Source: Macrostomum lignano (lineage: Eukaryota). Taken from it: 64,000 nucleotides of DNA. Shown in pieces: positions 23,273 through 64,000 of this stretch. The notes below the pieces were generated by a model that saw only the letters and a program-made list of their open reading frames with translations, ran no database searches and was not told the DNA's origin. The translations under genes and the position numbers were made by a program. Each line of letters opens with the position of its first letter. Position 1 is the first letter of the stretch. The stretch spans positions 88,175 to 152,174 of the forward strand of contig NIVC01002657.1 in NCBI GenBank assembly GCA_002269645.1, in the 5' to 3' direction.

Positions 23273-23295
23273 GGCGGTCAGATGGGCTGACCTGA

Positions 23296-25665: not shown

Positions 25666-28600
25666 TCAGTCATCGGGCTCGCCATTAACCAGCTGCTCCA
25701 GTTTGGGCCGCAGCAGCTCATGTTGATGTTCAACCGACCAACCCTCCGGCAGGTACTTCGGTTTCATGCTAGTCAAAAAATGGTCTCTCCATCGCCGCTC
25801 CAGCTCCAACAGGCGACCGCTGTCCAGGCACTTCTGTACAACAATCCGAGCTAACTGGCTGGACTGTTGGGCAGGAGTTTTGGCTGCCGATGCCACTATA
25901 GCTTGCAGCTTTTCTATAGGGATCGAATTGATGGAATCCTCGTCTTCATCGTCAGAATCTTCTGCATCGGTGGTTAAGTCCGTAGCAATTATTTGTTTTA
26001 GCTCGCTGGAAATCTCTGTTAGTCTGGCCTCGGGAATATTGGCCTTGCCGCTAGCGTGGGCCAGCAATGCTTTGGCCAGGCTTTTGGCTCTCTGGTCTGC
26101 CGCCACCGTGTGCGATGCCTGGCGGTCAAGTGCGAGTTTAATGGGAATATACTGACATGATCCTCACTGTGACATGATCCTCACTGTGACATGATCCTCA
26201 CTGTGACATGATCCTCACTGTGACATGATCCTCACTGTGACATGATCCTCACTGTGACATGATCCTCACTGTGACATGATCCTCACTGTGACATGATCCT
26301 CACTGTGACATGATCCTCACTGTGACATGATCCTCACTGTGACATGATCCTCACTGTGACATGATCCTCACTGTGACATGATCCTCACTGTGACATGATC
26401 CTCACTGTGACATGATCCTCACTGTGACATGATCCTCACTGTGACATGATCCTCACTGTGACATTATCCTCCCTGTGACATGATCCTCACTGTGACATGA
26501 TCATCACTGTGACATGATCCTCAGTGCCATGATCCTCATTGTGACATGATCCTCATTGTGACATGATCCTCAGTGCCATGATCCTCACTGTGACATGATC
26601 CTCACTGTGACATGATCCTCAGTGCCATGATCCTCATTGTGACATGATCCTCAGTGCCATGATCATCAGTGACATGATCCTCACTGTAACATAATCCTCA
26701 CTGTGACATGATCCTCACTGTGACGTGATCCTCACTGTGACATGATCGTCACTGTGACATGATCCTCACTGTGACATGATCCTCACTGTGGCATGATCCT
26801 CAGTGACATGATCCTCACTGTGACATGATCCTCACTGTGACATTATCCTCCCTGTGACATGATCCTCACTGTGACATGATCCTCATTGTGACATGATCCT
26901 CAGTGCCATGATCCTCACTGTGACATGATCCTCACTGTGACATGATCCTCACTGTGACATGATCCTCACTGTAACATGATCCTCACTGTGGCATGATCCT
27001 CAGTGCCATGATCCTCATTGTGACATGATCCTCATTGTGACATGATCCTCAGTGCCATGATCCTCACTGTGACATGATCCTCACTGTGACATGATCCTCA
27101 CTGTGACATGATCCTCACTGTGACATGATCCTCACTGTGACATGATCCTCACTGTAACATGATCCTCACTGTGGCATGATCCTCAGTGCCATGATCCTCA
27201 TTGTGACATGATCCTCATTGTGACATGATCCTCAGTGCCATGACCCTCACTGTGACATGATCCTCACTGTGACATGATCCTCACTGTGACATGATCCTCA
27301 GTGCCATGATCCTCATTGTGACATGATCCTCAGTGCCATGATCCGCATTGTGACATGATCCTCACTGTAACATAATCCTCACTGTGACATGATCCTCACT
27401 GTGGCATGATCCTCAGTGACATGATCCTCACTGTGACATGATCCTCACTGTGACATGATCCTCACTGTGGCATGATCCTCAGTGACATGATCCTCACTGT
27501 GACATGATCCTCACTGTGACATTATCCTCCCTGTGACATGATCCTCACTGTGACATGATCGTCACTGTGACATGATCCTCAGTGCCATGATCCTCATTGT
27601 GACATGATCCTCAGTGCCATGATCCTCATTGTGACATGATCCTCACTGTGACATGATCCTCACTGTAACATGACCCTCACTGTGACATGATCCTCACTGT
27701 GACATGATCCTCCCTGTGACATGATCCTCAGTGCCATGATCCTCACTGTGACATGATCCTCACTGTGGCATGATCCTCACTGTGACATGATCCTCAGTGA
27801 CTTGATCCTCACCGTGACATGATCCTCAGTGCCATGATCATCAGTGACATGATCCTCACTGTGACATGATCCTCACTGTGACGTGATCCTCACTGTGACA
27901 TGATCGTCACTGTGACATGATCCTCACTGTGACATGATCCTCACTGTGGAATGATCTTCAGTGACATGATCCTCACTGTGACATTATCCTCCCTGTGACA
28001 TGATCCTCACTGTGGCATGATCCTCAGTGACATGATCCTCACTGTGACATTATCCTCCCTGTGACATGATCCTCACTGTGACATGATCGTCACTGTGACA
28101 TGATCCTCAGTGCCATGATCCTCATTGTGACATGATCCTCAGTGCCATGATCCTCATTGTGACATGATCCTCACTGTGATATGATCCTCACTGTAACATG
28201 ACCCTCACTGTGACATGATCCTCACTGTGACATGATCCTCACTGTGACATGATCCTCAGTGACATGATCCTCACTGTGACATGATACTCACTGTGACATG
28301 ATCCTTACTGTGACATGATCCTCACTGAGACATGATCCTTGCTGTGACATGATTCTTACTGTGATATGATCCTCACTGTGACACTGAGGGCGATTCTCAT
28401 TTGTGACACTAAGGGCGATTCTAAGAGTGATTCGAATGCAGTTCAAAAACCGCAGAACCACGCGACCCTACCATCTCCAGCCCGAACTCGTGGATCAGCT
28501 CCTTCTTAAAGGCCTCAGTATGCCTCTCGCTAATCGCATGGCAGCGGCCGCATAGCAACAAAATATCGTGCGACTTGTGCGACTTCAACAGCTCAGGAAA

Positions 28601-34600: not shown

Positions 34601-36435
34601 AAGGCGATTGTAAGGTGTCTGAGGGAATTGTAAGATGTCTGAGGGGATTGTAAGGTGTCTGAGAAAATAGTAAGGTGTCTGAGGAGACTGTAAGGTGCCT
34701 GAGGGGATTTTAAGGTGTCTGAGGCGATTGTAAGGTGTCTGAGGCGATTGTAAGGTGTCTGAGGCGATTGTAAGGTGCCTGAGGGAATTGTAAGATGTCT
34801 GAGGGGATTGTAAGGTGTCTGAGGGGATTGTAAGGTGTCTGAGAAAATAGTAAGGTGTCTGAGGAGACTGTAAGGTGCCTGAGGGGATTTTAAGGTGTCT
34901 GAGGCGATTGTAAGGTGTCTGAGGCGATTGTAAGGTGTCTGAGGCGATTGTAAGGTGCCTGAGGGAATTGTAAGATGTCTGAGGGAATTGTAAGATGTCT
35001 GAGGGGATTGTAAGGTGTCTGAGGAGACTGTAAGGTGCCTGAGGGGATTGTAAGGTGTCTGAGGCGATTGTAAGGGCTGGTGTCTGAGGCGATTGTAAGG
35101 TGTCTAAGGCGATTGTAAGGGCTGGTGTCTGAGGCGATTGTAAGGTGTCTGAGGGAATTGTAAGGTGTCTGAGGAGACTGTAAGGTGCCTGAGGGGATTG
35201 TAAGGTGTCTGAGGCGATTGAAAGGTGTCTGAGGAGACTGTAAGGTGTCTGAGGGGATTTTAAGGTGTCTGAAGAGATTGGAAGGTGTCTGAGACGACTG
35301 AAGCGATTGAGGAGAATGCCTCACCAGCTTATTAGCATCCCCATCGATTCCAACGCCAAACTTGAACACAGTGCGATCCGCCAAGAAGGCCTCCAGCTGA
35401 GGCGGCACAACGGTGAGCCGCTGCACCCGAATGAGCAGAGCGCGCCCGTCATCAGTGGCCAGCTGCAGCAGTGCCAGCTGACCAACTTCCCCAAATTCAT
35501 TTTGCCAGCGCCATTCGCAGTCGAGGCCGCAGTAGCCTAATTGACGAGCGCGCGATTCGAACTCCGGCCAATGCTCCGCTAAGCTGGCATCGGAATCGAT
35601 AATGGTAGCACAGGGAGCCGACTGATCGGCAACTTTCTGCGGTTATTATTATTAAGCTTGATTTTATTCCATTTTTACTATAAGTAGTGCAGTTGATACA
35701 ATACAAAAATTGTTTATTCAAAATTTTCTATTTTACACTTCACAGTTCTCAATGAGCTTCTTAGAAATCGATTTTTCAATTTTATGTCGCTAGCCGTACG
35801 GGCCAATTGTAATGCGTAAGCGCTGCAAATGCACTGCATATTTCTATTTGTAGATTGCATTGTCTACTTGGGGTGGAGTAGTTGAAGAATATCAATCATA
35901 AAAAACTGACGCGTTGTTTGTGTGTATGCATATGTATGCAATGTAACTTCTCCCAGGCTACTTGCAACTCAGCGTTGAAATCAATCATAAAAATTACCTA
36001 AACAGCCAAATTTTCATGCATGTACTTCAAAACTATAAATCTTCCATCTGACACTACGAGCCAAAATTCAATTAATGGTTCTTTTTAGCGATTTGAGGAT
36101 TTCAGATCCCAGCCCTCGGATTCCGCTCATTCCCTGCCTTCAAATCCATGGACAGAGCTGTGTTGTGTCATCATTTCGAGGGCGCCACCACTCATAAACC
36201 ATAGTGGCCCGCAAAATCATAGAATAGCAGGTATGGATTTGAAGCGCCATCGTACCTTGTACTTGTGCTTTCGCAGCTCGACATTGCGGCTCAGCAGTGT
36301 CTCATTAGTCACCCGCTGTTGACGTTTTCGACGAAGCAGAGCGAAGCAGACAAGCAGAGTCGCAGCCGTTGCTAAGGGCACAGCTAATCTTACAGCATTG
36401 CGCAGTGTTGCGTAAGAAGCCAGCCTTTCGGACAT
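25666..36435 (-). CDS. EXD2: Exonuclease 3'-5' domain-containing protein 2, 5 exons, 594 aa
   Basis: Exons 36435-36256, 35636-35325, 29614-29148, 28811-28472, 26151-25666 join in frame. N-terminal TM anchor; DEDDy motifs GLDCEW, GDANKL, YSALDA; PLYHNCQMLAPD..RKADWY, CVVCG, SHDILLLCGRCH, LERRWRDHFLTSMKPKYLP..WSVEH match EXD2. Confidence 0.95.
26152..28385. repeat. 17-bp minisatellite (CTCACTGTGACATGATC) filling EXD2 intron 4
   Basis: About 130 copies; near-perfect at 26160-26460, with variant units further right. Confidence 0.97.
28826..29095. repeat. 45-bp repeat of two GGGCGATT subunits in EXD2 intron 3
   Basis: GTGAGGGCGATTTTAGAGGCGGTTTGGGGGCGATTTCTCAAGGT, ~5 copies. Confidence 0.9.
29680..35310. 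repeat. 20-bp minisatellite (GAGGCGATTGTAAGGTGTCT), ~5.6 kb, filling EXD2 intron 2
   Basis: About 280 copies, with variant units recurring in fixed order. Confidence 0.98.
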
Positions 36436-37044: not shown

Positions 37045-37662
37045 AATGCAACAAAGGCTCACTAGATCAGCAACAAAGAGTCACTGGTTCAGCAACAAAG
37101 AGTCACTGGATCAACAACAAAGAGCCACTGGATGAGCAACAAAGAGACATTGGTTCAGCAACAAAGAGTCACTGGTTCAGCAACAAAGAGCCACTGGATC
37201 AGCAACAAAGAGCAACTGGATCAGCAACAAAGAGCAACTGGATCAGCAACAAAGAGCTACTGGATCAGCAACAAAGAGCAACTGGATCAGCAACAAAGAG
37301 CAACTGGATCAGCAACAAAGAGCAACTGGATCAGCAACAAAGAGCAACTGGATCAGCAACAAAGAGCAACTGGATCAGCAACAAAGAGCTACTGGATCAG
37401 CAACAAAGAGTCACTGAATCAGCAACAAAGAGCAACTGGATCAGCAACAAAGAGTCACTGGTTCAGCAACAAAGAGCAACTGGATCAGCAACAAAGAGCT
37501 ACTGGATCAGCAACAAAGTGTCACTGAATCAGCAACAAAGAGCAACTGGATCAGCAACAAAGAGCTACTGGATCAGCAACAAAGTGTCACTGAATCAGCA
37601 ACAAAGAGCAACTGGATCAGCAACAAAGAGCTACTGGATCAGCAACAAAGAGTCACTGGATC
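37045..37662. repeat. 22-bp minisatellite (CAGCAACAAAGAGCAACTGGAT) in the FAM50-EXD2 spacer
   Basis: About 28 copies starting ~100 bp beyond the FAM50 stop. Confidence 0.95.
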
Positions 37663-37758
37663 AATGACTCAATGCAACAAAGAGCCAAGTAACGCATATT
37701 TATGAATATTAAAATTTTTACAATACACAACGAGCGACAAAACGACAAATCTCTCACA

Positions 37759-39349
37759 CTATTTAACATTAATAACATTGGCAGTCTTGAGCGAAGCGGG
37801 CAAACTATCCCAATTTTTAGTTGGATCAAAGGGCTCCCATCGGCAGGCCGGGAAGATGTGCTTATTCCTATCGTACCAGCTCCGCATGCACACCTTGCCA
37901 GCGTGGGTCTCCTGGCTAGGCTTGGCCGTGTCAACTGTTAGCCGAACGTCCTGCTTAACGTCGAACAGGTACAGCGGGCCGCTCTTGCCCCTGGCCTGAC
38001 TGGTGATGAGGTCTAGAAAGGCGACGTGATGCGGCAATATCGTATCCTCTTTAATAAACATCAATTGATCTTCGCTGATGCTGCGCAACTCTTGAAATTC
38101 TTTGCGCAATTGTTCCAATACTTTGCGCAGAAACTGCCCGATAGTGTTGCCCTTGGTAACGGTGACGCTGCGCCTGTGACCGGAGCCGTCCCAATAGCTG
38201 TACACCACTTCCATCTCTTCGGCTCGGAGACGGGCCTGGCTCTCTTGCCACTCCTGTTCGAGCTGTTGGCGGAGTCGACGCTCCTCGGCCTCGCGGTCAA
38301 TGTCCGGCAGGAACCAGGTGTCCACCTGCGGGTCCTTGCCGAACCGTCGCCTGCGCTTCTCCTCTTTTCTCTGCTCCTCGGCGACTTCATCCTGTGAGTC
38401 TTTGTCTTGGCGCGAATCTGAGTTGTCGCATTCTGATTGGCTATCGGATTTCTCGGCGCGTTTGTCTGAGTCTTTGTTTAACTTGGGCTTCTGAAATGGG
38501 AAGTCAGACAGTGGGGGGATTAAATTTTGCTTTATCACTGGGAGAATGGGGATAGATGGGCAGCTTCATCACTGGGAGAATGGGGATAATGAAGCAGTTT
38601 TATTATTGAGAGAATGGGATTAAATTAGCAGCTTCATCACTGGGAGAATGGGATTAAATAAGCAGCTTCATCATTGGGAGAATGGGATTAAATGAGCAGC
38701 TTCATCATTGCGAGAATGGGAATAAATAAGCATCTTCATCAATGGGAGAATGCAGGAATAAATGAGCAGCTTCATCACTGAGAGAATGGGGTAAATAAGC
38801 ATCTTCATCAATGGGAGAATGCAGGAATAAATGAGCAGCTTTATCACTGGGAGAATGGGATTAAATAAGCAGCTTCAACACTGGGAGAATGGGACAGCGG
38901 AGCGCACTTACATATTGCCGATCCTCAGGTGCCTGGTTGGATTCCTCTTCATCATCCTCCTCAGCATCTTCATCTCCATCGAAATCAAACGACAGAGCCC
39001 CAGTTTTCCTTTGCGATTGCTCTTTAGCGGCCAACTCCTCCGTTCGAGACTTCTTACCGCCAGCCTGACTACTAGATGCGGCAGCCTCAGCTTCTCGAGC
39101 CCGTTTCAATCGGTCCTGATGCCGCTTCATCTCGTCCAGGGTCACCAAGCCGACAGTGGATTCTCCAAGCGACTGATCGGCAAAGGAAGCTCCCGTATGA
39201 GTAGAAAATTTGTTTTTAATTTCGCCAATTCGCATCTCGGATTCCAAGCGCAGTTTGGCCAAGTCTAATTCGCGACGGTCTTTTTCGCGTTGCCGCTGCA
39301 GCTGCATGGCTCGCTGGGCTTCTTGGGCGGCGCCTTTGAAGAATGCCAT
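37759..39349 (-). CDS. FAM50A: FAM50/XAP5 family nuclear protein, 2 exons, 389 aa
   Basis: Exons 39349-38912 and 38490-37759 (phase 0). [74 protein letters not shown] are diagnostic. The symbol denotes the family; A/B orthology is not resolvable. Confidence 0.95.
38535..38895. repeat. ~34-bp repeat in the FAM50 intron
   Basis: GCAGCTTCATCACTGGGAGAATGGGATTAAAT(G)A, ~10 copies. Confidence 0.9.
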
Positions 39350-39469
39350 GCTGATTGGCTGCCGGTTAGCTGTTCAGTGCTGCAATGTACGAAGGTTGGG
39401 GAGATCTTTGACATTTCTTAGGAGCTCTACTCAGGATAGTCAAGGGGCGATTCTTGGAAATGTATAAGG

Positions 39470-40335
39470 GCTATTCTTGGGAATGTCTAGGGGCGATTTT
39501 CGGGAATGTCTATGGAGATTCTCGGGAATGTCTAGGGGCGATTCTCGGAAATGTCTAGGGGAGATTCTCGGGAATGTCTAGGGGCGATTCTCGGAAATGT
39601 CTAGGGGAGATTCTCGGGAATGTCTAGGGGCGATTCTCGGAAATGTCTAGGGACGATTGTCGGGAATGTCTAGGGGCGATTCTCGGAAATGTCTAGGGGA
39701 GATTCTCGGGAATGTCTAGGGGCGATTCTCGGAAATGTCTAGGGACGATTCTCGGGAATGTCTAGGGGCGATTCTCGGAAATGTCTAGGGACGATTCTCG
39801 GAAATGTCTAGGGACGATTGTCGGGAATATCTAGGGGCGATTCTCGGAAATGTCTAGGGGAGATTCTCGGGAATGTCTAGGGGCGATTCTCGGAAATGTC
39901 TAGGGACGATTGTCGGGAATGTCTAGGGGCGATTCTCGGAAATGTCTAGGGGAGATTCTCGGGAATGTCTAGGGGCGATTCTCGGAAATGTCTAGGGACG
40001 ATTGTCGGGAATGTATAGGAGCGATTGTCGGGAATGTATAGGGGCGATTCTACGCAATGACTAGGGGCGATTCTCGGGAATGTCTAGGGGAGATTCTCGG
40101 GAATGTCTAGGGGCGATTCTCGGAAATGTCTAGGGACGATTGTCGGGAATGTCTAGGGGCGATTCTCGGAAATGTCTAGGGGAGATTCTCGGGAATGTCT
40201 AGGGGCGATTCTCGGAAATGTCTAGGGACGATTGTCGGGAATGTATAGGAGCGATTGTCGGGAATGTATAGGGGCGATTCTACGCAATGACTAGGGGCGA
40301 TTCTCGGGAATGTCTAGGGGCGATTCTTGGGAATA
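39470..40335. repeat. 23-bp minisatellite (TCTAGGGGCGATTCTCGGGAATG) upstream of FAM50
   Basis: About 37 copies; same family as 41845-42540. Confidence 0.95.
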
Positions 40336-41561
40336 TCCAGGTGTGGTTTTCAAAAATGCTGAGGGGTGATTCTCACACTCTTGATACTGTCTAGGAATAA
40401 GTTAATCTGATGTCTAGGAGCGATTTATTAGTACTACCTCAGATCGATTTTATATGTTTCTTTTATACAAAACTACGAAAAAAAGCAAAAAGGCAAAGAC
40501 GAAACGAATTTCAAAACGTGCTGATGGGATTGCAAAGAAGAAAAACACAAGAAGAAAAACGCGCAGCAAACGTAGGTAGCGCTTATTTTTTAAATTTAAT
40601 CTTGCATCAATACCGATATCAGCGATTGAAACTTGATCCAATTAACTTAGTTAACAGCCGAAACCAATAAAAATTGAATATTGCTTTTTTTGCTACACAA
40701 AGTTAATCAAAAATCAAAAACCAGACCAATGATTTATTGCCAGATAGACTAGAATCTACGAGTATTATATAAAAAATACAATTTAACGATGCTTTAAGCG
40801 CCAGTACTTTCTTTTAAATTCGATTGTATAAAGATAACAACCTCACAGTTCAGAACTCACCTGTTGATATTGAATATAAACAAGCTGTGATTAAATCAAG
40901 CTCAAAATAAATGACACAAAACACTAAGTGACCGCGGTTCTAAATAATTCTTACACAGAAAGGAAATATAGATATAAATAATAAAAAACTGTTTTGATCT
41001 AAATTGCCGATTGTATAAATATTACTAATAGTAATAGGTGAATTTATTAATTATTGATTTGTCAATTGCAAATCATTGAAATCAATCGCTGGCATGCCGA
41101 CACTGCAAACGCATGCAGTAAACCGCTAAATAAATGACTAAAGCGGAACTGATAATCAACACTTTGATTTAACAAAAAAAACGATTAAACAAATTAAAAC
41201 AAATCAAAGGTACAAAGTTTCTTGTGACGATTGAATTAATCAAAGACACTTAGCACAACAGTTGGGTCTTTCGAATGAGACAAGAGAGAGTAATAAAGAG
41301 ACAAACTGAAAAAAACTTGAACAATGAGTAAACACACAGATTTCATTTATAATTCTGTTAATATCAAAGTGAAATTGTTTGAGGAAGCAAAAAAAGCATT
41401 TAGCGCAACAGGGAAAACAACGAATTATAATGTTCGTTTATCGGTAAAGGTTAAATAAGCTTAGAAGAGAAAACACAATGTGAAGACCATGCGCTAACTG
41501 CTCTACTAGTAAGTGGCAGTAGTAGCATTTTGTTGGATTTTTATGCTGTAAAACAAACTTT

Positions 41562-44500
41562 TTAAAGTTCCTCGTGCCTGCCCAGAGCTTCGCCAAAGTC
41601 GGTGGCCTGGCTGCCAACAAACACATCGTATTTGTCCATGATCTCCTGGCGGCTGAGCCGGCCGTCTTTGTCCGTGTCGGCCTGGCTCATCAGGTGGCGA
41701 GTCTCCGCTTCAACGTGATTGTAGTCTTCTGGCACAATCCAACTGGCGATCTGGTTAAGTTACGGCTTTTATATTGGTCATTTACTGCATCCAATCTGGG
41801 TCTTCGTTCGGCTGGTTTTTAAGAGTTTCAAAAGTTTATTGGTAATGTCTAGGGGCGATTCTTGAGAATGTCTAGGGGCGATTCTTGAGAATGTCTAGGG
41901 GCGATTCTTGTGAATGTCTACGGGCGATTCGTAGGAATGTCTGGGGGCAATTCTTGGGAATGTCTAGGGCGATTTTTGGGAATGCCTAGGGGCGATTATT
42001 GAGAATGTCTAGGGGCGATTGTTGAGAATGTCTAGGGGCGATTCTTGGGAATGTCTAGGGGCGATTCTTGAGAATGTCTAGGGGCGATTCTTGTGAATGT
42101 CTACGGGCGATTCGTAGGAATGTCTGGGGGCAATTCTTGGGAATGTCTAGGGCGATTTTTGGGAATGCCTAGGGGCGATTATTGAGAATGTCTAGGGGCG
42201 ATTGTTGAGAATGTCTAGGGGCGATTCTTGGGAATGTCTAGGGGCGATTCTTGAAAAATCTAGGGGGGATTCTTGAAAATGTCTACGGGCGATTCTGGGG
42301 AATGTCTAGGGGCGATTCTTGGAAATGTCTAGGGGCGATTCTTGAGAATGTTTAGGGGGCAATTTTTGAAAATGTCTACGAGCGATTTTTGGGAATGTCT
42401 AGAGGCGATTTTTAAAAATGTCTAGGGGCGATTCTTGACGATGTCTAGGGGCGATTCTTGACGATGTCTAGGGGCGATTCTTGGGAATGTCTAGGGGCGA
42501 TTCTTGAGAATATCTAGGGGCCGATTCTTAGGAATGTCTAGGGCACTACACAGTCGATATTTTACAATGATAAAAGAACAAAGACTGTGACGATCCTTTA
42601 CCTCAGCCTGATCCAATCTACCATCTTTATTCTTATCGCGAACGTTGCTAAACGTTTCCCGCTCAGTCTTGACCCAGTCGGGCTCCTGCTCCCCAGCGCT
42701 GGGCGTCCACATATCGGCAATGTATTCGTTGATATCGACTCCGCCGTCTTTGTCTTTGTCCATGTCTTCAAGGGTCTCTAGGCCAACTAGTTCGCGCATG
42801 TGCGGCGCCTCCTCCGGATGGGTGAAGTCGGTGAACTCGGCTAGGCTGAGCATGCCGTCACCGTCGCGGTCGGCGCGTTGCCAACGACGCTGGTCTCTGC
42901 GCGATAAATTTGTTTGTGTAAATAATTAACATATTTGATTCTACTTGTCAACGGGCAGATGTGCAACCGACAGCTCAACCGCAGATAATGCTGGCACCCA
43001 TTTTTATAGAATTTTAAAATTAAGCGTCTTGCTTAAGGACACAAATTGTTCCGACGAGTGGATCGAGAATCGAACCCCCGACTTGTCAGTCGTAGGTCCG
43101 AGTCGAGTCTCGGTGCTCGCGTTGTAGTTGTCACGACGGACGACAAACAGCGCGGAACGCGATATGAGGCTTACATTTGAATCGAAAGGGTCCGTCTATA
43201 CCAGTCGTATGCTGAGGCCAAGCGAAATGAGCGCACATGTGCTCATTTACCCACGGTACCGACGCCTAAACCGTGTCCGCAATGTGCGTCTTTACGTTGT
43301 CGCCCTGGCTAAGCGAGATGGTGCCTACAAAACTCTAGAAGAAGAACTTCGAAAGAGTAAGCACGAGCGAGAGGAGCTTGCGTTGCGACTTGAAAGTGCC
43401 CGTGATCAACGGCGTCAATTGACGCAGCAGAGCGCATTAACGCTGTAACGCAAGCGACTGGACTACAGACTTCGGCGACGGAAGCGTGCGCTGCGCCTAC
43501 ACCCGGTGCAACTTGCACTGAGGCTGCGACGTCAGTAGCTTCGATTTCGGAAGATGACCGGCAGGTTTTCATTGACAACTCATTGATGAGCTCGTGGACC
43601 CAGCCGTCACTATTGACGACATTCTGGCCGACAATAACGAAGCACTTAGATGCTACGGTAAGCTAGTAATAGCCCTTCGTTTATGATCGCGCACATAATC
43701 TATTGATAATCAAATGCTCTCCAATCCTTAAATAAGACACCTCTGCAGCCAGTCGGTTTCGCCTTTACGTCCAACCTCGCCCGGACCAGGGTCACTGCCC
43801 GAGTAAATATCTATAAAGATTCGAGGACTCCGGCCGACCTCAGTGCTCTTCTCTGCGAGATGGTGCGAGGGTGCTTTAGCGACAACGAGCTGTTAGTAAA
43901 GTCGTTGCGTGGTCGCGCTACTGAGCCTGGTCGGCCGCGCCTGCCAGTGGACACGCGGCGTTTACAGGCCATTATCGACTACCTTGCTAGAGTCGACATC
44001 GCAACCAGCCTGAAAGCTGTTGAAAAGGCCTACGTCCGCTGCACCATTACCGTCAGTCGACGTGAAAAGCGGTCCGGACGTTTGCCTGTCAAGAAGCCTT
44101 GACAAGGTGCGTCTGTCGGTGTCACTGACACTGTACAGTCGGAGGCGACCAGTGCATCTCGCGAGGACTGACCGGTATCTGTTGCTTCCAGCATAACAAT
44201 TGGCCTATACGGGACTGATCTTGGCATGTTTTTCCTATGCCTATAGGGTTTTCACCTGCAAATCTGCTCCTTCACACAAAAAGCAACCAACTACACCATT
44301 ATGGATCGTAAAAGACTAGCACCATGAATCAGGCCTGGTGTCTTGCAGGCACACTGGCATCTCACCTGATTGCTGACGTCAATAACGTCATGCAATAAAA
44401 AAAGTAATAGGGGTTTTGCTCTACGTTCTGCTTCTGCATGTTTTTTCACATGCTTACTTTTTAATTGTTTGTTAATTACCTGTTTATATCCCTTTCGGTT

Positions 44501-46633
44501 GGTTTCACATTTAGTTCTGCATTTTCTTCTCATTTCGCAGCCTCCACTTTTCATGGTTTCTAATTGTTTTTCTGTCATATTTACTGTATTCTATTTACCT
44601 CATTTTCCATCAAATATATATATATATATACAGACAGCATCCGTTTTTTTCCAAACTGTTTTAATTTGTATGTTTGCCCTCTACATTATTTACAAGTTCA
44701 ATTTACACTGGCAACTTGTCTCTCCTCCTTTAAACATGTACTTTTTTTATAAAATGTTAGCTAATTCATACACTTTACCGCGTCAACTATAACAGCATCA
44801 AATGGCAAATTTATGCATCTATTATAACTGCTTAAAACTGCACATTTACTTGTCAATTTCATATACCCCAAATGGCACATCTATGGCACAGTTGCCAAAC
44901 TGTGCCACTAATTGTCGTTAGAGGCGGAGAGCCCACTTTCTAGTCGTTTCGACAGTTATTTCGCGCTTCGATCTAATTCAATTATTTCCGAACAGGCCTT
45001 TAAAACACAAGTAGAAAATGGTTTAAACTAATCTGGCATTTGTACTTAAATGCGCAGCGCGTTACACTGCCCTGACGATGGGAAAGTCAGGGCCGCTGAA
45101 CACCTTGTCAATCAGTCATAAGTCTTATAAACCTTGAACAAAGGTGGAATAAGTTCTCACCTGCTCATACTCTTAGAAGTAGCTTCGTCGGTATCTTTGC
45201 CAAAATTGCGCGCCTTATAGGTGTCCCAGGACAGCTTGTCGGCTGGTGAGGATGCGTAGTCTAAGAACTGCTTGCGACTGTCCTCGGTGACGTAGCGCTT
45301 AGAGATGTAGTCGATCCAGTCGCTGAGCTCTTTCTCTGTCACCTGGAGTATTGCGGATGTACAATTTAGTGCACTGTTCAAAGGTACCCCACTCAGCAAC
45401 TGAGGATCTGGGAGGCTGGCCCAGCGACTGAGGATCTGGGAGGCTGGCCCAGCAACTGACACTCTGGGAGGCTGGCACAGCAACTGACACTCTAGGAGGC
45501 TGGCACAGCAACTGACACTCTGGGAGGCAAGCCCAGTAACTAAGGATCTGGGAGGCTGGCCCAGCAACTGACACTCTGGGAGGCTGGCACAGCAACTGAC
45601 ACTCTGGGAGGCTGGCACAGCAACTGACACTCTGGGAGGCTGGCCCAGCAACTGACACTCTGGGAGGCAAGCCCAGTAACTAAGGATCTGGGAGGCTGGC
45701 CCAGCGACTGAGGATCTGGGAGGCTGGCACAGCAACTAACACTCTGGGAGGCAAGCCCAGTAACTAAGGATCTGGGAGGCTGGCCCAGCAACTGACACTC
45801 TGGGAGGCTGGCACAGCAACTGACACTCTGGGAGGCTGGCACAGCAACTGACACTCTGGGAGGCTGGCACAGCAACTGACACTCTGGGAGGCTGGCACAG
45901 CAACTGACACTCTGGGAGGCAAGCCCAGTAACTAAGGATCTGGGAGGCTGGCCCAGCGACTGAGGATCTGGGAGGCTGGCACAGCAACTGACACTCTGGG
46001 AGGCTGGCACAGCAACTGACACTCTGGGAGGCAAGCCCAGTAACTAAGGATCTGGGAGGCTGGCCCAGCAACTGAGGATCTGGGAGGCTGGCCCAGCAAC
46101 TGACACTCTGGGAGGCTGGCACAGCAACTGACACTCTGGGAGGCAAGCCCAGTAACTAAGGATCTGGGAGGCAAGCCCAGCAACTGAGAATCAGTGACCA
46201 GTGAGGCTGGTGGCCCAGCAACTGAGGATCTAGGGAATTCTAGTACTGGATTGCTTGTCTAATACTGAGATCACAGAACAGTTCAACCAATGTCCCAGAA
46301 TCTCACCATTCCATCATTGTCTTTGTCAATTTTGTCAACAATTTTTCCCAAATTCGCTTTACTCTCTTCTGGCGACATCTTATCGAACTTGCTGGAATCC
46401 TCCTTCCCCAGGAAGGCCTCGTGATCGTACTTGTGATCGTCTTCATCCTCGTCCTCGTCATGGTCCAAGTCGCTCAGATCGTGCTGATAGACGCGGTCGC
46501 CGCTGTCCTTGTGCGAGGAATCGGCTTTGACAACGGCTGGACTGGCCTGAGCGGATGGCAAACTGACAGCCAAGGTTATGGCAATAACAGCCAGGGTCAT
46601 TAGTGGCAGTACAGACGAATGGCAGTTGGACAT
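41562..46633 (-). CDS. Calumenin/reticulocalbin (CREC family) multi-EF-hand ER protein, 4 exons, 330 aa
   Basis: Exons 46633-46307, 45342-45161, 42896-42602, 41750-41562 in frame. Signal peptide; [66 protein letters not shown]; C-terminal HEEL retention signal. Confidence 0.95.
41845..42540. repeat. 23-bp minisatellite (TCTAGGGGCGATTCTTG(A/G)GAATG) in calumenin intron 3
   Basis: About 30 copies. Confidence 0.95.
42945..43120 (-). mobile_element. tRNA-derived SINE remnant in calumenin intron 2
   Basis: Minus strand has the B-box GGGGGTTCGATTC followed by TGTGTCCTTAAGCAAGACGCTT, a conserved SINE core motif. Confidence 0.55.
43120..44102 (+). pseudogene. Decayed CxxC + coiled-coil + BEN-like domain gene nested antisense in calumenin intron 2
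   Basis: [11 protein letters not shown], then heptad [26 protein letters not shown], an intron (43658-43748, GTAAG..CTGCAG, phase 0), then [40 protein letters not shown]; several frameshifts and stops upstream. Confidence 0.5.
45390..46235. repeat. 28-bp minisatellite in calumenin intron 1 (pre-mRNA strand GATCCTCAGTTGCTGGGCCAGCCTCCCA)
   Basis: About 30 copies; same family as the arrays in the thioredoxin reductase intron. Confidence 0.95.
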
Positions 46634-53541: not shown

Positions 53542-54594
53542 CAGGTTTTAATCTTTAAAGATTCATTTTTAGGCCTCAAAGCTCAGCCTGGTGTAGCTAG
53601 TCCAGCTCATCTACTAGTAGTTAATTAAGATAAAGCAAGGAGAAGCTGCTTAGGCCTAATAAGTCTAGATAGATGAGCCCACACACTTGTTGATTGATAT
53701 AATTTCATTTGGGACATCTCTGCTTAGGTACTCATTGACTATCTAATTGAACTGACAGGCCCTAGTCATTACCCTTGAATGGATATAAATGCAAGTGATT
53801 ATCTATTAAAGTTATTTGGTTAGGCTTAGCTCAACTCAAACTCAACTTTTAGTTCATAGTTTATTAGTTTGTTTCCAGTTATGTAAGAAAAAGACTGGTG
53901 TATTAGAAATGAATTTTTGCATGAATTCAAGTTTAGCTAACAATTCTTAAAGATTCCCCTAGCATGATATAGATCTATATAGTCAGAATCATTATATACA
54001 TGCCATAATATTCAAGACCAAAAATTTCTATCATGATACTTCTATTTCTATAAACTTAAACTTAAACTCAAATTCTGCTCCAATGCTTAAAAAGAGAAGT
54101 AAAGTAGTCCCAATATATGTAGTCTAATCCTCCTACTTGTAGCCCATATTCAAGAACTTGGTCTATCTACTAGAACTTTCATCCAAATAACTATAGAAAT
54201 AGTATATAGTTAAAATAACCAGTATCCAGAAAATTCATCTAGGGCCCATATAGCAAGGAGGAAGTATTTGGTAATAGAAGAATTGGTTATCTAGTGAATT
54301 TTAGACCTATTGCAATAAAGTCCTTGCATAGCCAATGCATTATACAATATAATATGATCCAATATATGTAGCTAATGTATTATTTAAATCAATTAAAACT
54401 TTCAACATATATAGGCCTATTAGCTCAACAAAATATTAAATACTTTTTTGGAAAAAGGTTTTATAAATACAAGTTATAAAAATGTTATGAAATTATTAGA
54501 TTATTTTAACTTAGATTTCCACCTTATAATAAACTTACTGATTTTATAAAACTTTTATTTCAGTCTTTTGAGCAAATCTTGGTATCTTATAGGC

Positions 54595-57500
54595 ATGCCT
54601 TATGAAGGAACAGTGTGTCCTTTTTGCTCAAAGCCATATACTTTGAGTCAGGTAGGACAGTATATGTGTCATTTAAAATCTCATGGTTTTAACTTGCATC
54701 ATTTGAAAGTCCCAAGTTCAAGGTCAAAGAGTGCAAATATCAGGCAGCGCCTTTTAGACAATAGGAGGAACAGAAAGGTAAGACATTAAATTGAGTTTAA
54801 TAATTATGCAGAATGTTTCCAATACTACTCATCAGTAATGCAGTAACAATATACGGTTGCTAAACAGCACCCTAAAGAACTCCATTTTGAACCCTAATTC
54901 AGAGGCTACGGATTTTACATGGCAGTCCATCAGCTAGACTTCCTGCTGTGCCAGAAGAAGATCCGCAAATTGTTGATGACAATCTAGCACAGCCAATTAT
55001 TGAGTCTGTAAGCTTTGTTTGCATTTTGCTGTATTGGTTAAACCTAACAGTGCTATAAACTGAAGGACCATTGTCTGGCATTATAAAGTGATGGAAACTA
55101 CATGATAACTACTAAACCTATTTACATATTTAAAAATACTTAGATTGATGCCGAATCGAATCTGGAGTCAGCTGCGAGTAGTAGCCGTCGAGTGCAACAA
55201 CAGCATAGCGAAGAGCAGCCTTCAAGTGCTCAGACTCAATCAAGTGACTTAATTTCAAACGTGTCTCGCGATTTAGTGATTAATTTAACTCGCTGCGATG
55301 CTAGCCAGGTAATTATGTGCTGTTTATCGAGTAATATTTCAGATTTTCTTGCCTTATTGAAGTATCAGTAGTTTCGAAAACATGGAGTGTGCAGAATTTT
55401 GCAACATCTGTAGTGTCAAGGGTAAGGGTTGTGATGTTGATATTCCATTTGATTTTCAACTTTTTTTACTTATGTCTCGAATTTACTAAGGTTTTGAATG
55501 AGGAAGCTGCTGACGGCGTAGAGACTGCTCAACCGGAAGTACCGCAGGAGCCCAGTTATTACATTGCGAATCGCTATTTTCCAATAGTTAGACTCGCACG
55601 TCTGGAGTATTTGCCTACTGATAAGGTGAGTAGTAAATATTGTATTTACTGTTTGTAGTAAAATAAGTTACTAAGTATGTTATAATTAGCTAAATAGCCA
55701 TCTATAATTTTACCTTTAGTTGTCGGCATCTGCGTCTTCATTACTGCGTATTCCTCTAGAGCGTAACGATAATGAGAGTGAAACTGAAACTTCTGCTTCT
55801 TCTGCTGCTTCTGTTGCTGCTGCTTCTGCACCTGCGGCGACTGAAGCAGAAGAGATGGCCACATTGCCAGAGCAGATTTGCCGGCAACGCATTGCCGTGG
55901 TTAGACTGACTCGCTTGGATAGTTTCACGTCAATGGTTTCGTTAGATAAATCGGTAAGTTACTTCGGTTTCTCGTCATTTCTCCAGTTGTCTACTTAACG
56001 TGTGTATGCTTGAGCTTTGATACGTTATTGTTAATAATGCGTTTATTGTTGTTACTTTAAATCCTGCCTCGCTCTCATTAGGTGGCGCAATCCCGGTCGA
56101 CCAGATCTCAGACCCTAGACACAACGGTTGAGCGAAAGAGGTTTGTGGAAACTGGAGAGCAACAGAAAACCAGGTCATCTTGCTTGGGGCCCAGAACCCG
56201 ACATCAGGATGCTGAAGATGAAGAGCCGAGCAGGCCCAGAACCCGACATCAGGATGCTGAAGATGAAGAGCCGAGCAGGCCCAGAACCCGACATCAGGAT
56301 GCTGAAGATGAAGAGCCGAGCAGGCCTAGAACCCGACATCAGGATGCTGAAGATGAAGAGTCAGGCAGACCAAGAACCCGGAAACGGGATACTAGAGATG
56401 GAGAGCTGAGCAGACCCAGAACCCGACATCAGGATGCTGAAGATGAAGAGTCAGGCAGACCAAGAACCCGGAAACGGGATACTAGAGATGGAGAGCTGAG
56501 CAGACCCAGAACCCGACATCAGGATGCTGAAGATGAAGAGTCCGGCAGACCAAGAACCCGGAATCGGGATACTAGAGATGGAGAGCTGAGCAGACCCAGA
56601 ACCCGACATCAGGATGCTGAAGATGAAGAGCCGAGCAGGCCCAGAACCCGACATCAGGATGCTGAAGATGAAGTGCCAAGCAGGCCCAGAACCCGACATC
56701 AGGATGCTGAAGATGAAGAGCCGAGCAGGCCCAGAACCCGACATCAGGATGCTGAAGATGAGGAGTCAAGCAGTCCCAGAACCCGACACCAGGATGCTGA
56801 AGATGAAGAGCTGAGCAGGCCCAGAACCCGACATCAGGATGCTGAAGATGAGGAGTCAAGCAGTCCCAGAACCCGACACCAGGATGCTGAAGATGAAGTG
56901 CCAAGCAGGCCAAGAACCCGACATCAGGATGCTGAAGATGAGGAGTCAAGCAGTCCCAGAACCCGACACCAGGATGCTGAAGATGAAGTGCCAAGCAGAC
57001 CCAGAACCCGACATCAGGATGCTGAAGATGAAGAGTCAGGCAGACCAAGAACCCGGAATCGGGATACTAGAGATGGAGAGCTGAGCAGACCCAGAACCCG
57101 ACATCAGGATGCTGAAGATGAAATGCCAAGCAGGCCCACAACCCGACATCAGGATGCTGAAGATGAGGAGTCAAGCAGTCCCAGAACCCGACACCAGGAT
57201 GCTGAAGATGAAGAGCTGAGCAGGCCCAGAACCCGACATCAGGATGCTGAAGATGAGGAGTCAAACAGTCCCAGAACCCGACACCAGGATGCTGAAGATG
57301 AAGTGCCAAGCAGGCCCAGAACCCGACATCAGGATGCTGAAGATGAAGAGTCAGGCAGACCAAGAACCCGGAAACGGGATACTAGAGATGGAGAGCTGAG
57401 CAGACCCAGAACCCGACATCAGGATGCTGAAGATGAAGTGCCAAGCAGGCCAAGAACCCGACATCAGGATGCTGAAGATGAGGAGTCAAGCAGTCCCAGA

Positions 57501-58550
57501 ACCCGACACCAGGATGCTGAAGATGAAGTGCCAAGCAGACCCAGAACCCGACATCAGGATGCTAAAGATAAAAGGCCGAGAAGATCTAGAACCCAAGATC
57601 GGGATGCTGAAGATGAAGAGCCAAGAAGATCCAGAAACCGACATCAGGATGCTGGAGATGAAGAGCTGAGTAGACCCCGAACTCGACACCAGGATGTGGC
57701 AAATAAAAGGTTAAAAAGGTCCAGAACCCGGGAATGGGACATAGGAAATGAAAAGCTAAGATCCAGAACCCGACATCAGGATGCTGAAGATATAGACCGG
57801 AGCAGACCTCGGACACGACACCATCTTGCTGAAAATCTAGAGTCGAAAAGGTCTAGAACCCGACATCAGACTGAGCATGAAGAGCCGAGAAGGTCCAGAA
57901 CCCGACATCAGCAGGAGACTGGGCATGAAGAGCCGAGAAGGTCCAAAACTCGACACAATAGCCTTCATCGACATAGTTCAGCCTCGTCGTTCCAAGAAGC
58001 CCGGCAGCAGAGCAACAGTCCATTAGGCAGCAGTCATAGAAGCTTCCGCTGTCGCCTCTGTCGCGCCCGCTTCATTCGGAACGGCGACTTGAAGGCGCAC
58101 GCGCGAGTGCACAGCGGCGCAAAGCCGTTCCGTTGCGCTCAGTGCGCGAGACGCTACGCACTGGCTGGCGATCTGCAGCGGCACGTCCGCTCAGCGCACC
58201 GGCTGGACCGGCCGCACAAGTGCAATCGTTGCGGCAAATGTTTTGCTAGAGAATTCGACCTGAGCTGTCATGCGAGAACGCACACAGGTGATAAGCCTTT
58301 CAAATGCGACCTGTGCGGCATCAGCTTTGGTCATTCCAGCACCTTGGCTAAGCACAGACGCGTGCACACTGGCGAAAAGCCGTATCGTTGCTCACAGTGT
58401 AGCATGCGGTTTTCCCTAGCGTCCAGTCTCACCAATCACTTGCGAATTCACAGCGGTGAGAAACCGTTTAAATTTCGATTTTGCGGCAGCAAGTTCTCTC
58501 AGGTTAGCACGCTGTCTAAGCATTATCGAATGCACGCAGAGGGTAGATGA
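54595..58550 (+). CDS. C2H2 zinc-finger protein with large charged repeat, 6 exons, ~1096 aa
   Basis: Exons 54595-54777, 54903-55007, 55144-55308, 55491-55625, 55720-55953, 56082-58550, all GT-AG phase 0. N-terminal finger CPFC..HLKSH; five intact C-terminal fingers with TGEKP-type linkers plus one degenerate finger. Confidence 0.85.
56185..57950 (+). repeat. 45-bp coding minisatellite (RTRHQDAEDEExSRP)
   Basis: Roughly 35-40 in-frame 15-aa units, degenerating at the 3' end. Confidence 0.95.
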
Positions 58551-59229
58551 TCAAAAACGTGATTCAAATTGAAATCTCCGTTTTCATCTGGTTGCAAATT
58601 CTGTCACCAGTTTTGTTCGACTGAAAGTTGTGTTGTTAGTTCTTTTTTGTATTTTTCTAATTAAAATTTGAAATTAAATCAATGCGTTTTGCATTTTTCC
58701 GGCATTAACTTGCATTATTTAAACAATGCCTTTGTTAGGGAGGGGGGTGTTTGAAAAGCCTACGAGAATAGGTCTGCAATTACTACATGTAAGCCTGTGC
58801 GTAGCTATCTCATAGTGTTCCTGCCTTCTAATTTTAGTTTGGATCATTATCATTAGTCTGGGTGAGATATTATTTGAGAAGTTAATTGCTTTTCCTGTCT
58901 CTGGGGGAGTTATAAGTGGTATTCAGATTGATTTTGTCAAGATCGGGATTATAATTCTTCCGAGTCATATTGGAGTAGGAAGGTTCGTACAAAAGGGTAT
59001 AGAAAGAATCTTTTTCAGGAGTACAAGACTCCCATATCCCATTCCTTATAGGCCATGATTGTTTCGAATTTCTGAAGCAGAGTCCTTCATCTCCTTAGAA
59101 CAGGGGTCCGCAAACTCCGGCCTGAAAAGCCTCTGTATCTGGCCATCGGGTCCTTTTGAAACTTCACAATGGCAATCCGGCCCGCTGAAGTTTTGTTTCT
59201 TATCTCAGGTTTTCTCAGGTTCTTTTCTC

Positions 59230-59545
59230 TCTAATCTCTTGTCTCTTGTTCTCTCATCTCCTCTCTCCTATCCCTCCCTTCTCTTCTCTCATCTCCTCTC
59301 TCCTATCCCCTCCCTTCTCTTCTCTCATCTCCTCTCTCCTATCCCTCCCTTCTCTTCTCTCATCTCCTCTCTCCTATCCCTCCCTTCTCTTCTCTCATCT
59401 CCTCTCTCCTATCCCCTCCCTTCTCTTCTCTCATCTCCTCTCTCCTATCCCCTCCCTTCTCTTCTCTCATCTCCTCTCTCCTATCCCCTTCCTTCTCTTC
59501 TCTCCCCTCCCTTCTCCTCTCCACTCCTCTCTCCTCTCCTCTCAT
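59230..59545. repeat. ~35-bp polypyrimidine repeat between the zinc-finger gene and thioredoxin reductase
   Basis: CCCTCCCTTCTCTTCTCTCATCTCCTCTCTCCTAT, ~8 copies. Confidence 0.9.

Positions 59546-59724: not shown

Positions 59725-64000
<4,276 letters not shown>

What the first reader, a model, noticed from the sequence alone, without database searches (positions are those of the whole stretch)
54595..58550. Zinc-finger protein with three TRIM28-like HP1-box motifs: a possible KRAB-free, one-protein silencer
Seen: once spliced, three consecutive small exons each end in a related motif: DLVINLTRCD (~55270), FPIVRLARLE (~55578, exact PxVxL) and IAVVRLTRLD (~55891). Known: PxVxL binds the HP1 chromoshadow dimer, and TRIM28/KAP1 uses VPRVSLERLD, with the same trailing RL[DE]. 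Inference: a sequence-specific finger array wired directly to HP1, doing the job of KRAB-ZFP plus TRIM28 in a lineage without KRAB. The exon-per-motif layout suggests modular duplication.
Basis: partly seen in the sequence, partly recalled or inferred. Interest (0 to 1): 0.72.

Follow-up and report, generated by a model that had tools for sequence, protein, structure and literature searches.

The report
Orphan zinc-finger gene with HP1-box-like motifs
A compact six-exon zinc-finger gene from an unidentified non-tetrapod animal carries four (not three) short motifs that fit the published signature for docking heterochromatin protein HP1, so it may bind HP1 directly, as a few known zinc-finger proteins already do; binding, expression and conservation are all untested.

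Summary
A six-exon model (54595-58550, + strand) with canonical GT..AG sites and only phase-0 introns gives a 1096-aa protein. It has an N-terminal C2H2-like finger, a ~270-aa region modelled only at low confidence, a 15-aa coding minisatellite of about 38 units, and six C2H2 fingers (five intact). I found a fourth, LLRIPLERND, at the start of exon 5.

All four fit hydrophobic-x-[V/I]-x-L-x-R-x-[D/E]. This is the core of the extended HP1a-binding signature published in 2025, whose +4 basic residue is nearly invariant. Four core matches occur in the first 310 aa against 0.31 expected (P about 1e-4), and none in the other 786 aa. Only one copy passes every auxiliary rule.

HP1 docking is the best-fitting known mechanism, but it is inference. 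No homologue of the N-terminus exists in 1.84 billion representative proteins, so conservation cannot be tested. No transcript evidence exists. The exons share no DNA similarity, so recent exon duplication is not supported.

Zinc-finger proteins wired directly to HP1 are already known (LIN-13, Oddjob, ADNP/ADNP2). This is a candidate new member of a known kind.

The parts
54462..54467 (+). TATAAA about 130 nt upstream of the ATG; possible core promoter element
   Evidence: The flank is AT-rich, so chance occurrence is likely. No upstream exon candidate was found in 47-54.6 kb, and an in-frame stop precedes the ATG.
54595..54777 (+). Exon 1 (61 codons): start codon, an isolated C2H2-like finger (C8-x2-C11-x13-H25-x3-H29, 54616-54681) and the start of a basic helix or NLS-like stretch
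   Evidence: AF2 gives its best, still modest, confidence here (pLDDT about 63; helices at residues 20-29 and 43-64).
54903..55007 (+). Exon 2 (35 codons), phase 0-0
55144..55308 (+). Exon 3 (55 codons), phase 0-0; carries motif A
55270..55299 (+). Motif A, DLVINLTRCD (register L-2, I0, L+2, R+4, C+5, D+6)
   Evidence: It fits the HAC core but has Asp at -3 and only 2 basic residues in -4..+4. Low-confidence AF2 strand.
55491..55625 (+). Exon 4 (45 codons), phase 0-0; carries motif B
55578..55607 (+). Motif B, FPIVRLARLE (P-2, V0, L+2, R+4, L+5, E+6); the only exact PxVxL
   Evidence: It fits the HAC core but has Tyr at -4 and only 2 basic residues in -4..+4.
55720..55953 (+). Exon 5 (78 codons), phase 0-0; carries motifs D and C
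55744..55770 (+).
55891..55920 (+). Motif C, IAVVRLTRLD (A-2, V0, L+2, R+4, L+5, D+6; R at -4, -6 and +1); the only copy that passes all rules of the extended HP1a signature
   Evidence: Low-confidence AF2 strand.
56082..58550 (+). Exon 6 (822 codons plus stop TGA at 58548-58550): linker, coding minisatellite and finger array
56190..57944 (+). Coding minisatellite: about 30 near-identical 45-bp units (PRTRHQDAEDEEPSR and variants) followed by about 8 degenerate units of 42/45/48 bp that keep the frame. About 585 aa, half of the residues charged, net charge about -25
58044..58535 (+). Six tandem C2H2 fingers with TGEKP-type linkers. Finger 6 has Phe (TTT, 58473-58475) in place of the first Cys
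   Evidence: Pfam zf-C2H2 6.3e-21 and zf-H2C2_2 6.5e-33; finger list
58660..58678 (+). Two ATTAAA polyadenylation-like signals about 110-125 nt after the stop

Best explanation
This is a lineage-restricted (orphan) C2H2 zinc-finger gene of a non-tetrapod animal. Its protein has five or six DNA-reading fingers at the C-terminus. At the N-terminus, a region modelled only at low confidence (likely disordered) carries four copies of a short strand-forming motif, hydrophobic-x-[V/I]-x-L-x-R-x-[D/E].

The most likely role of these copies is to dock into the groove of the HP1 chromoshadow-domain dimer, one dimer per copy, as the TRIM28 HP1 box and the Drosophila 'HP1a access codes' do. The protein would then be physically coupled to HP1 with a valency of up to four. 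Either it seeds HP1-rich repressive chromatin at the DNA sites its fingers read, as LIN-13 does, or HP1 holds it in existing heterochromatin, as with ADNP2 and Oddjob.

Shown here: the gene structure as a sequence-level model, the motifs, their non-random clustering, and their fit to the published signature.

Inferred: expression, HP1 binding, the direction of recruitment, and any silencing or transposon targeting.
For: - Gene model: in-frame, canonical splice sites, all introns phase 0, and a GC step between exons and introns. The finger exon has no start of its own.
- Motif core: the core of the signature from PMC12526061 matches four times in residues 140-261 and nowhere in the other 786 aa. 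Shuffles give a mean of 0.31, P about 1e-4. The background rate is 1.34 per 1000 aa in the six-frame translation and 0.41 per 1000 aa in 135 unrelated proteins, none of which has 3 or more hits within 130 aa.
- Position +4 is Arg in 4 of 4 copies; +5 is hydrophobic in 3 of 4 (L, L, C); +1 is Arg in 2 of 4; -1 is hydrophobic in 3 of 4.
- Motif C passes every published rule.
- The TRIM28 box has the same P/V/L/E/R register.
- The four copies use different codons. For example, Leu at +2 is TTA, CTC, CTA or CTG. The similarity is therefore at the peptide level.
- The region is modelled only at low confidence (AF2 pLDDT about 40, consistent with disorder), with strand propensity at two motifs. Published HACs lie in disordered regions and bind as a strand.
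- Several redundant HP1 boxes per protein are documented (HP4 has three, HP5 has two).
- Finger proteins that bind HP1 directly are documented.
Against: - No binding, expression or conservation data exist.
- The N-terminus has no detectable homologue, so the conservation filter that the HAC authors recommend cannot be applied.
- PxVxL-like pentamers predict HP1 binding poorly: 10 of 20 candidates in proven HP1a partners failed.
- Three of the four copies have only 2 basic residues in -4..+4, where the signature asks for 3-6. Motif A has an excluded Asp at -3 and motif B an excluded Tyr at -4.
- The surrounding region is net acidic (-12 over exons 3-5), whereas Drosophila HACs sit in basic clusters.
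- The signature was derived for Drosophila HP1a, not for this unknown species.
- The less biased repeat test is only moderately significant (8 of 1000 shuffles).
- I wrote the core regex from the paper's text after I had seen the motifs.
Confidence: 0.4

Rival explanations
1. The motifs are real functional short linear motifs, but for another strand-addition partner. The most obvious is SUMO (SUMO-interacting motifs of the psi-psi-x-psi kind, as clustered in RNF4). Other candidates are a calcineurin- or CtBP-like docking groove, or an unknown lineage-specific cofactor.
For: Three of the four copies contain the [VI][VI]x[VIL] SIM core (VINL, IVRL, VVRL). That is 3 hits against 0.60 expected, P = 0.016. 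Two read V-x-L-T, reminiscent of the psi-psi-D-L-T SIM subtype (my own knowledge, not tested). Clustered SIMs occur in chromatin repressors. AF2 gives strand propensity.
Against: The SIM core is less enriched than the HP1 core (P 0.016 against 1e-4) and does not cover motif D. The invariant Arg at +4 and the frequent Arg at +1 have no role in SIMs, which favour acidic or phospho-serine neighbours because the SUMO groove is basic (established knowledge). No copy matches the CtBP, eh1 or WRPW patterns.
Confidence: 0.13
2. The repeated strands are structural or historical rather than a docking code. One option is that they pair with each other, or between two molecules, to form a small self-association element, the role ZAD, BTB or SCAN domains play in other finger proteins. 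The other is that they are relics of an old internal duplication with no present partner.
For: Both AF2 runs place strands at motifs A and C (residues about 139-148 and 249-258). Many finger-protein N-termini are dimerisation modules (established knowledge). Internal similarity is confined to about 9 residues and its unbiased significance is modest.
Against: AF2 confidence is very low (pLDDT 40, pTM 0.17-0.23). No Pfam domain matches. With no DNA similarity left between the exons, relics of an old duplication should have decayed at the peptide level too unless selected. The exact match to an independently defined HP1 code would then be coincidence.
Confidence: 0.2
3. The gene model is wrong or the locus is not a working gene. 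The small upstream exons may not be spliced to the finger exon, or the locus may be a decaying or young, untranslated finger gene in a minisatellite-ridden region.
For: There is no transcript or protein evidence. No identical or similar protein is on record. Finger 6 has lost a zinc ligand. A crude codon-usage score does not favour the predicted frame for exons 1 and 2. The window is full of expanding minisatellites, and one occupies half of the coding sequence.
Against: Five consecutive canonical introns of 94-182 nt all keep the frame, each with a GC step. The finger ORF starts exactly at an acceptor and lacks its own ATG. The degenerate minisatellite units differ in length only by multiples of 3. 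Five fingers are intact with canonical linkers. The motif copies are similar as peptides, not as DNA. The codon test was underpowered: about 520 training codons, and even the finger region scored near 0.
Confidence: 0.15
4. It is a pure chance resemblance in a compositionally ordinary disordered region.
For: PxVxL-like pentamers occur in more than half of all proteins. The best pair of 9-mers is not significant on its own. Tandem repeats elsewhere in the window produce regex clusters trivially.
Against: Four core hits against 0.31 expected (P about 1e-4). The best triple is reached by only 8 of 1000 shuffles. Four of the five window-wide hits of the stricter pattern lie in this gene's reading frames. 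All four copies share exact Leu at +2, Arg at +4 and an acidic residue at +6. The copies are not part of a DNA tandem repeat.
Confidence: 0.05

Closest known systems
TRIM28/KAP1 HP1 box (R483-K484-x-P486-R487-V488-S489-L490-E491-R492)
   Same: Same register of buried residues (-2, 0, +2) followed by x-Arg at +4. Motif D even shares Glu at +3 and Arg at +4. Motif B shares Pro at -2, Val at 0, Leu at +2 and Arg at +4. In TRIM28 the box binds as a strand sandwiched by the two tails of the chromoshadow dimer, and V488E abolishes binding (PMC12126490).
   Different: TRIM28 has one box and no DNA-reading fingers; it is brought to DNA by KRAB finger proteins. Here four boxes sit on the finger protein itself. 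There is no RBCC, PHD or bromodomain and no KRAB domain, so there is no homology, only a motif-level resemblance. The Leu-Asp after R492 in TRIM28 is from my memory and was not checked here.
Drosophila 'HP1a access codes' (HACs; Colmenares et al. 2025, PMC12526061), including those of the ZAD finger protein Oddjob and of HP4 and HP5
   Same: Core: hydrophobic -2, V/I 0, aliphatic +2, basic +4. Hydrophobic residues are favoured at -1 and +5, and basic residues at +1, -4 and -6. HACs lie in disordered regions and come in several redundant copies per protein. Oddjob's functional motif lies in the linker before its fingers.
   Different: Only motif C meets all auxiliary rules. The local context is acidic rather than basic. 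No ZAD domain is present. Conservation among homologues, a hallmark of HACs, cannot be shown. The species is unknown.
C. elegans LIN-13 (multi-finger protein that binds the HPL-2 chromoshadow domain)
   Same: A C2H2 finger protein in a KRAB-free animal that binds HP1 directly through the chromoshadow domain and determines where HP1 concentrates and represses.
   Different: LIN-13 has about 24 fingers. No sequence similarity to this protein was detected. For this gene, motif number, gene structure and function are untested.
Vertebrate ADNP/ADNP2 (ChAHP and ChAHP2 complexes)
   Same: Finger proteins with a conserved PxVxL that binds HP1 beta/gamma and acts on retrotransposons (PMC11293393).
   Different: They have a single C-terminal motif, also a homeobox and a CHD4-binding region, and are well conserved.
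Lineage-specific finger-gene families with novel N-terminal effector modules (KRAB in tetrapods, FiNZ in cyprinid fish, ZAD in insects)
   Same: The architecture is a short N-terminal effector region plus a C-terminal finger array. The open question is how non-KRAB families recruit silencing machinery (PMC10547256).
   Different: Those are large families defined by a conserved domain. Here a single gene has no detectable relatives and a linear-motif cluster rather than a domain.

Membership tests
HP1 chromoshadow-domain ligands (PxVxL / HAC motif class) | Hydrophobic residue at -2, Val or Ile at 0, aliphatic residue at +2 | tested here: met
   LVINL, PIVRL, LRIPL and AVVRL. Only PIVRL is a literal PxVxL.
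HP1 chromoshadow-domain ligands (PxVxL / HAC motif class) | Basic residue at +4, nearly invariant in 173 Drosophila HAC sequences | tested here: met
   Arg at +4 in 4 of 4 copies; rule from PMC12526061.
HP1 chromoshadow-domain ligands (PxVxL / HAC motif class) | 3-6 basic residues between -4 and +4; no acidic residue at -6, -3, -1, +1 or +5; no aromatic residue at -4 or +6 | tested here: inconclusive
   Motif C meets all of these. A, B and D have only 2 basic residues; A has Asp at -3 and B has Tyr at -4. The rules come from Drosophila HP1a only.
HP1 chromoshadow-domain ligands (PxVxL / HAC motif class) | Lies in an intrinsically disordered region | tested here: met
   AF2 single-sequence pLDDT is about 40 across residues 63-310, and no Pfam domain matches. 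This is weak evidence, because no alignment was available.
HP1 chromoshadow-domain ligands (PxVxL / HAC motif class) | Motif conserved among orthologues or paralogues | tested here: inconclusive
   No homologue of the N-terminus was found by word-index search, by exhaustive HMMER on 1.84 billion representatives, or by two metagenome scans. No paralogue exists in the window.
HP1 chromoshadow-domain ligands (PxVxL / HAC motif class) | Physical binding to the chromoshadow dimer, lost when position 0 is mutated | not testable with these tools
   This needs a complex prediction or a bench assay. Chimeric or foreign sequences could not be submitted to the structure tool.
Tandem C2H2 (Kruppel-type) zinc-finger proteins | Repeated C-x2-C-x12-H-x3-5-H units joined by TGEKP-type linkers | tested here: met
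   Pfam zf-C2H2 6.3e-21 and zf-H2C2_2 6.5e-33. Six units, five with all four ligands.
KRAB zinc-finger / TRIM28 system | KRAB domain on the finger protein (or RBCC-PHD-bromodomain for TRIM28 itself) | tested here: not met
   No Pfam hit to KRAB or any TRIM domain in residues 1-310 at E up to 1.
ZAD zinc-finger proteins (Oddjob type) | N-terminal C4 zinc-finger-associated domain | tested here: not met
   No ZAD hit. Exon 1 has a C2H2-like unit instead, C-x2-C-x13-H-x3-H.
SUMO-interacting motifs | Hydrophobic core [VI][VI]x[VIL] or [VI]x[VI][VI], flanked by acidic or phospho-serine residues | tested here: inconclusive
   The core is present in 3 of 4 copies (P = 0.016). However, Arg lies inside and just after the core, there is only one acidic residue at +6, and motif D does not fit.

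The most novel reading that the evidence does not exclude
A non-tetrapod animal has evolved, on a young orphan finger gene, a multivalent TRIM28-like HP1 docking array: four boxes spread over three in-frame cassette exons. A single polypeptide would then read DNA and nucleate HP1 chromatin without KRAB, TRIM28 or ZAD. Because every intron is phase 0, alternative splicing could tune the HP1 valency from 0 to 4. A fast-expanding charged 15-aa minisatellite separates the effector region from the fingers.
Probability: 0.2. Interest if true: 0.55.

Novelty: new member of a known kind. Interest (0 to 1): 0.36.

Why it matters
How the very large, fast-evolving finger-gene families outside tetrapods recruit repressive chromatin is still open. 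For example, the cofactor of the fish FiNZ domain is unknown (PMC10547256).

A finger protein carrying several HP1 boxes would be one more independent solution, alongside LIN-13, Oddjob and ADNP. It would also be a compact natural example of multivalent HP1 scaffolding, which current work links to heterochromatin foci.

As it stands, this is one unannotated gene without relatives, transcripts or binding data. It is a testable lead, not a discovery. The practical value of this check is that it replaces a remembered resemblance (the trailing RL[DE]) with a published, experimentally derived rule (basic at +4, hydrophobic at +5), adds a fourth copy, and shows which copy (motif C) should be tested first.

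Tried and rejected
- Homologues of the N-terminus: the word-index search found nothing at E up to 10. Exhaustive HMMER found two hits that are artefacts of repetitive giant proteins. The full-length search returned only generic finger proteins such as ZNF236. The PDB gave nothing.
- Metagenome scans with the exon 4-5 peptide and with exact exon 5 DNA gave nothing.
- Exact-product look-ups were meant to identify the source. Three contiguous ORFs are not on record.
- Rfam and tRNA scans for lineage markers found none. The organism stays unidentified beyond 'animal, not tetrapod'.
- Exon duplication: pairwise local DNA alignment of exons 2-5 against codon shuffles gave P from 0.46 to 1.0, so recent duplication is rejected.
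- Paralogues in the window: none.
- A codon-usage frame test trained on the FAM50 and TrxR exons was underpowered and uninformative.
- AF2 without an alignment, run twice, gave low confidence. It suggests a region without a confidently modelled fold and strand propensity, and says nothing about binding.
- The CtBP, eh1 and WRPW patterns and a strict HP1 regex written from memory gave no hits. The strict HP1 regex fails because of Arg at +1, which the 2025 HAC study in fact finds favoured.
- A nuclear-export-signal reading was considered by eye and dropped, because no NES class fits more than one copy.
- Upstream exons: none are evident in 47-54.6 kb.


Full report
**What is in the sequence**

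Reading 54000-59500 and translating all frames shows short open segments upstream of one long ORF (56082-58550). Joining them at canonical GT..AG sites gives six exons: 54595-54777, 54903-55007, 55144-55308, 55491-55625, 55720-55953 and 56082-58550.

- Every intron is phase 0 and 94-182 nt long.
- The product is 1096 aa with one terminal stop.
- Exon GC is 0.39-0.54 against 0.23-0.37 for introns and 0.29-0.35 for the flanks.
- The long ORF begins exactly at an acceptor and has no ATG near its start, so it must be spliced to upstream exons.
- An in-frame stop precedes the ATG. A TATAAA lies about 130 nt upstream and two ATTAAA signals about 110-125 nt downstream of the stop. No further upstream exon is evident.
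- The model is well supported at the sequence level but has no transcript support. A crude codon-usage test was uninformative.

**Anatomy of the protein**

- Exon 1 encodes an isolated C2H2-like unit (C-x2-C-x13-H-x3-H), followed by a basic helix.
- Residues about 63-310 have no Pfam domain and are modelled by AF2 only at pLDDT about 40, which fits a disordered region.
- Exon 6 carries a 45-bp coding minisatellite: about 30 nearly identical units (PRTRHQDAEDEEPSR and variants) and about 8 degenerate units of 42/45/48 bp that keep the frame. It spans about 585 aa, half of them charged.
- The C-terminus has six C2H2 fingers with TGEKP-type linkers (Pfam 6e-21 and 6e-33). The last finger has Phe in place of its first Cys.

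**The motifs**

A pattern scan found a fourth copy, LRIPLERND, at 55744 near the start of exon 5. In HP1-box numbering all four read hydrophobic(-2)-x-[V/I](0)-x-L(+2)-x-R(+4)-x-[D/E](+6).

Three tests show that they are not chance:
- An unbiased search for the best triple of 9-mers in the first 310 aa returns these three motifs, a score reached in only 8 of 1000 shuffles.
- The stricter pattern occurs five times in all six frames of the 64-kb window. Four are these motifs; the fifth spans a stop codon.
- A core pattern taken from the literature gives four hits against 0.31 expected (P about 1e-4), none in the remaining 786 aa, and background rates of 0.4-1.3 per 1000 aa.

The layout is not strictly one motif per exon, because exon 5 holds two. 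The exons share no DNA similarity, and the copies use different codons. Recent modular duplication is therefore not supported. If the copies share an origin it is old, and only the peptide motif has been kept.

**What the motifs most likely do**

PMC12126490 names P486, R487, V488, S489, L490, E491 and R492. It shows the box as a strand sandwiched by the two chromoshadow tails with P/V/L buried, and V488E abolishing binding.

A 2025 study of Drosophila HP1a (PMC12526061) is more telling. It derived an extended signature from 173 functional sequences:
- about 80% hydrophobic at +5;
- basic residues favoured at +1, +3, -3, -4 and -6;
- 3-6 basic residues in -4..+4;
- no acidic residue at -6, -3, -1, +1 or +5, and no aromatic at -4 or +6;
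- location in disordered regions, often in several redundant copies per protein.

All four copies meet the core. Motif C (AVVRLTR, with Arg at -4, -6 and +1) meets every rule. The other three each miss one or two auxiliary rules. The neighbourhood is acidic rather than basic.

The same paper warns that bare PxVxL-like pentamers predict binding poorly (10 of 20 failed) and recommends conservation as a filter. That filter cannot be applied here. HP1 docking is the best-fitting known mechanism and I put it at about 0.4. It remains inference.

**Rivals**

- A SUMO-interacting reading covers three copies (P = 0.016). It does not explain motif D or the invariant Arg, and basic residues are atypical for such motifs.
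- A self-pairing or relic reading draws on the weak AF2 strands at motifs A and C.
- A wrong or non-functional gene model cannot be excluded without transcripts.
- Pure chance is disfavoured by the statistics above.

**Relatives and source**

- No homologue of the N-terminus exists in the word-indexed 5.8-billion-protein set or in an exhaustive HMMER scan of 1.84 billion representatives. The two hits from that scan are artefacts of repetitive giant proteins.
- The full-length query finds only generic finger proteins.
- Two metagenome scans and three exact look-ups found nothing.
- There is no paralogue in the window.
- The neighbouring FAM50/XAP5 gene is at most 63-64% identical to any animal FAM50, whether flatworm, mite, mollusc or vertebrate. 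A mitochondrial-type thioredoxin reductase gene lies downstream.
- The source is therefore an animal without close relatives in the databases and not a tetrapod.

**Comparison with what is known**

Finger proteins that bind HP1 directly are established:
- C. elegans LIN-13 binds the HPL-2 chromoshadow domain and determines HPL-2 foci and repression.
- Drosophila Oddjob has a conserved PxVxL in its linker that is needed for its broad heterochromatin localisation.
- ADNP and ADNP2 use a conserved PxVxL. For ADNP2 the motif brings the protein to H3K9me3 chromatin.

The principle is therefore not new, and the direction of recruitment is open. What would be distinctive here is four TRIM28-like boxes on in-frame cassette exons of an orphan gene. 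I file it as a candidate new member of a known kind. It is not a member of the KRAB/TRIM28 or ZAD families, whose defining domains are absent.

**Verdict**

- Observation: confirmed and extended with a fourth copy.
- Interpretation: partly supported.
- Novelty: modest.
- Interest: 0.36.

The lead is cheap to test. The order I suggest is spliced reads, then a chromoshadow-peptide complex prediction, then a peptide binding or foci assay, starting with motif C.

Noticed in passing
window 56190-57944: A 45-bp (15-aa) coding minisatellite fills half of the protein. About 30 near-identical units are arranged in higher-order blocks (unit types EEPSR, EESGR, KRDTRDGELSR, EVPSR, EESSS), followed by older degenerate units whose lengths differ only by multiples of 3. 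It is likely recently expanded and copy-number polymorphic. Its function is unknown.
   Followed up: partly
window 56197-57650, reading frame +1 relative to the gene: In the neighbouring, stop-interrupted frame the same repeat unit reads PEPDIRMLKMK. This also satisfies the HP1 core regex (PDIRMLK) dozens of times. It is almost certainly meaningless (Asp at -1, stops in that frame). It shows how easily regex clusters arise in tandem repeats.
   Followed up: partly
window 58473-58475: The sixth finger has TTT (Phe) where the first zinc-binding Cys (TGT/TGC) is expected. This could be a degenerate finger, a polymorphism or a sequencing error.
   Followed up: no
window 29690-35297; 26153-28383; 39439-40341; 41844-42543; 22504-23274; 37048-37663: The window is packed with kilobase-size minisatellite arrays. 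Examples are a 20-bp unit x 277 with very strong GC skew, a 17-bp unit x 134, and 23-bp units x 30-39. Several units share a GGGGCGATT-like core.
   Followed up: no
window 45000-46200 versus 60000-60900 and 62000-62500: Arrays of one 28-31-bp minisatellite family occur in inverted orientation on both sides of the AT-rich, roughly 14-kb segment that holds the finger gene. The right-hand arrays lie in introns of the thioredoxin reductase gene. Nothing inside the finger gene is repeated elsewhere in the window.
   Followed up: partly
window 59806-63157 (+): A mitochondrial-type thioredoxin reductase gene with a presequence-like N-terminus. Its best solved relatives are mammalian TrxR2 (E = 4e-38). 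Only two exon-bearing ORFs were examined.
   Followed up: partly
window 37762-39307 (-): A FAM50/XAP5 gene with at least two exons. The intron contains a 34-bp tandem array. The protein is only 59-64% identical to any animal FAM50 in the database, so the source lineage is poorly sampled.
   Followed up: partly
window 9586-11242 (+) and 28421-29047 (-): There are long ORFs without any Pfam match. The minus-strand ORF begins with a 15-aa tandem repeat (RNRPQTASKIALTTL, 45-bp unit), a second possible coding minisatellite.
   Followed up: no
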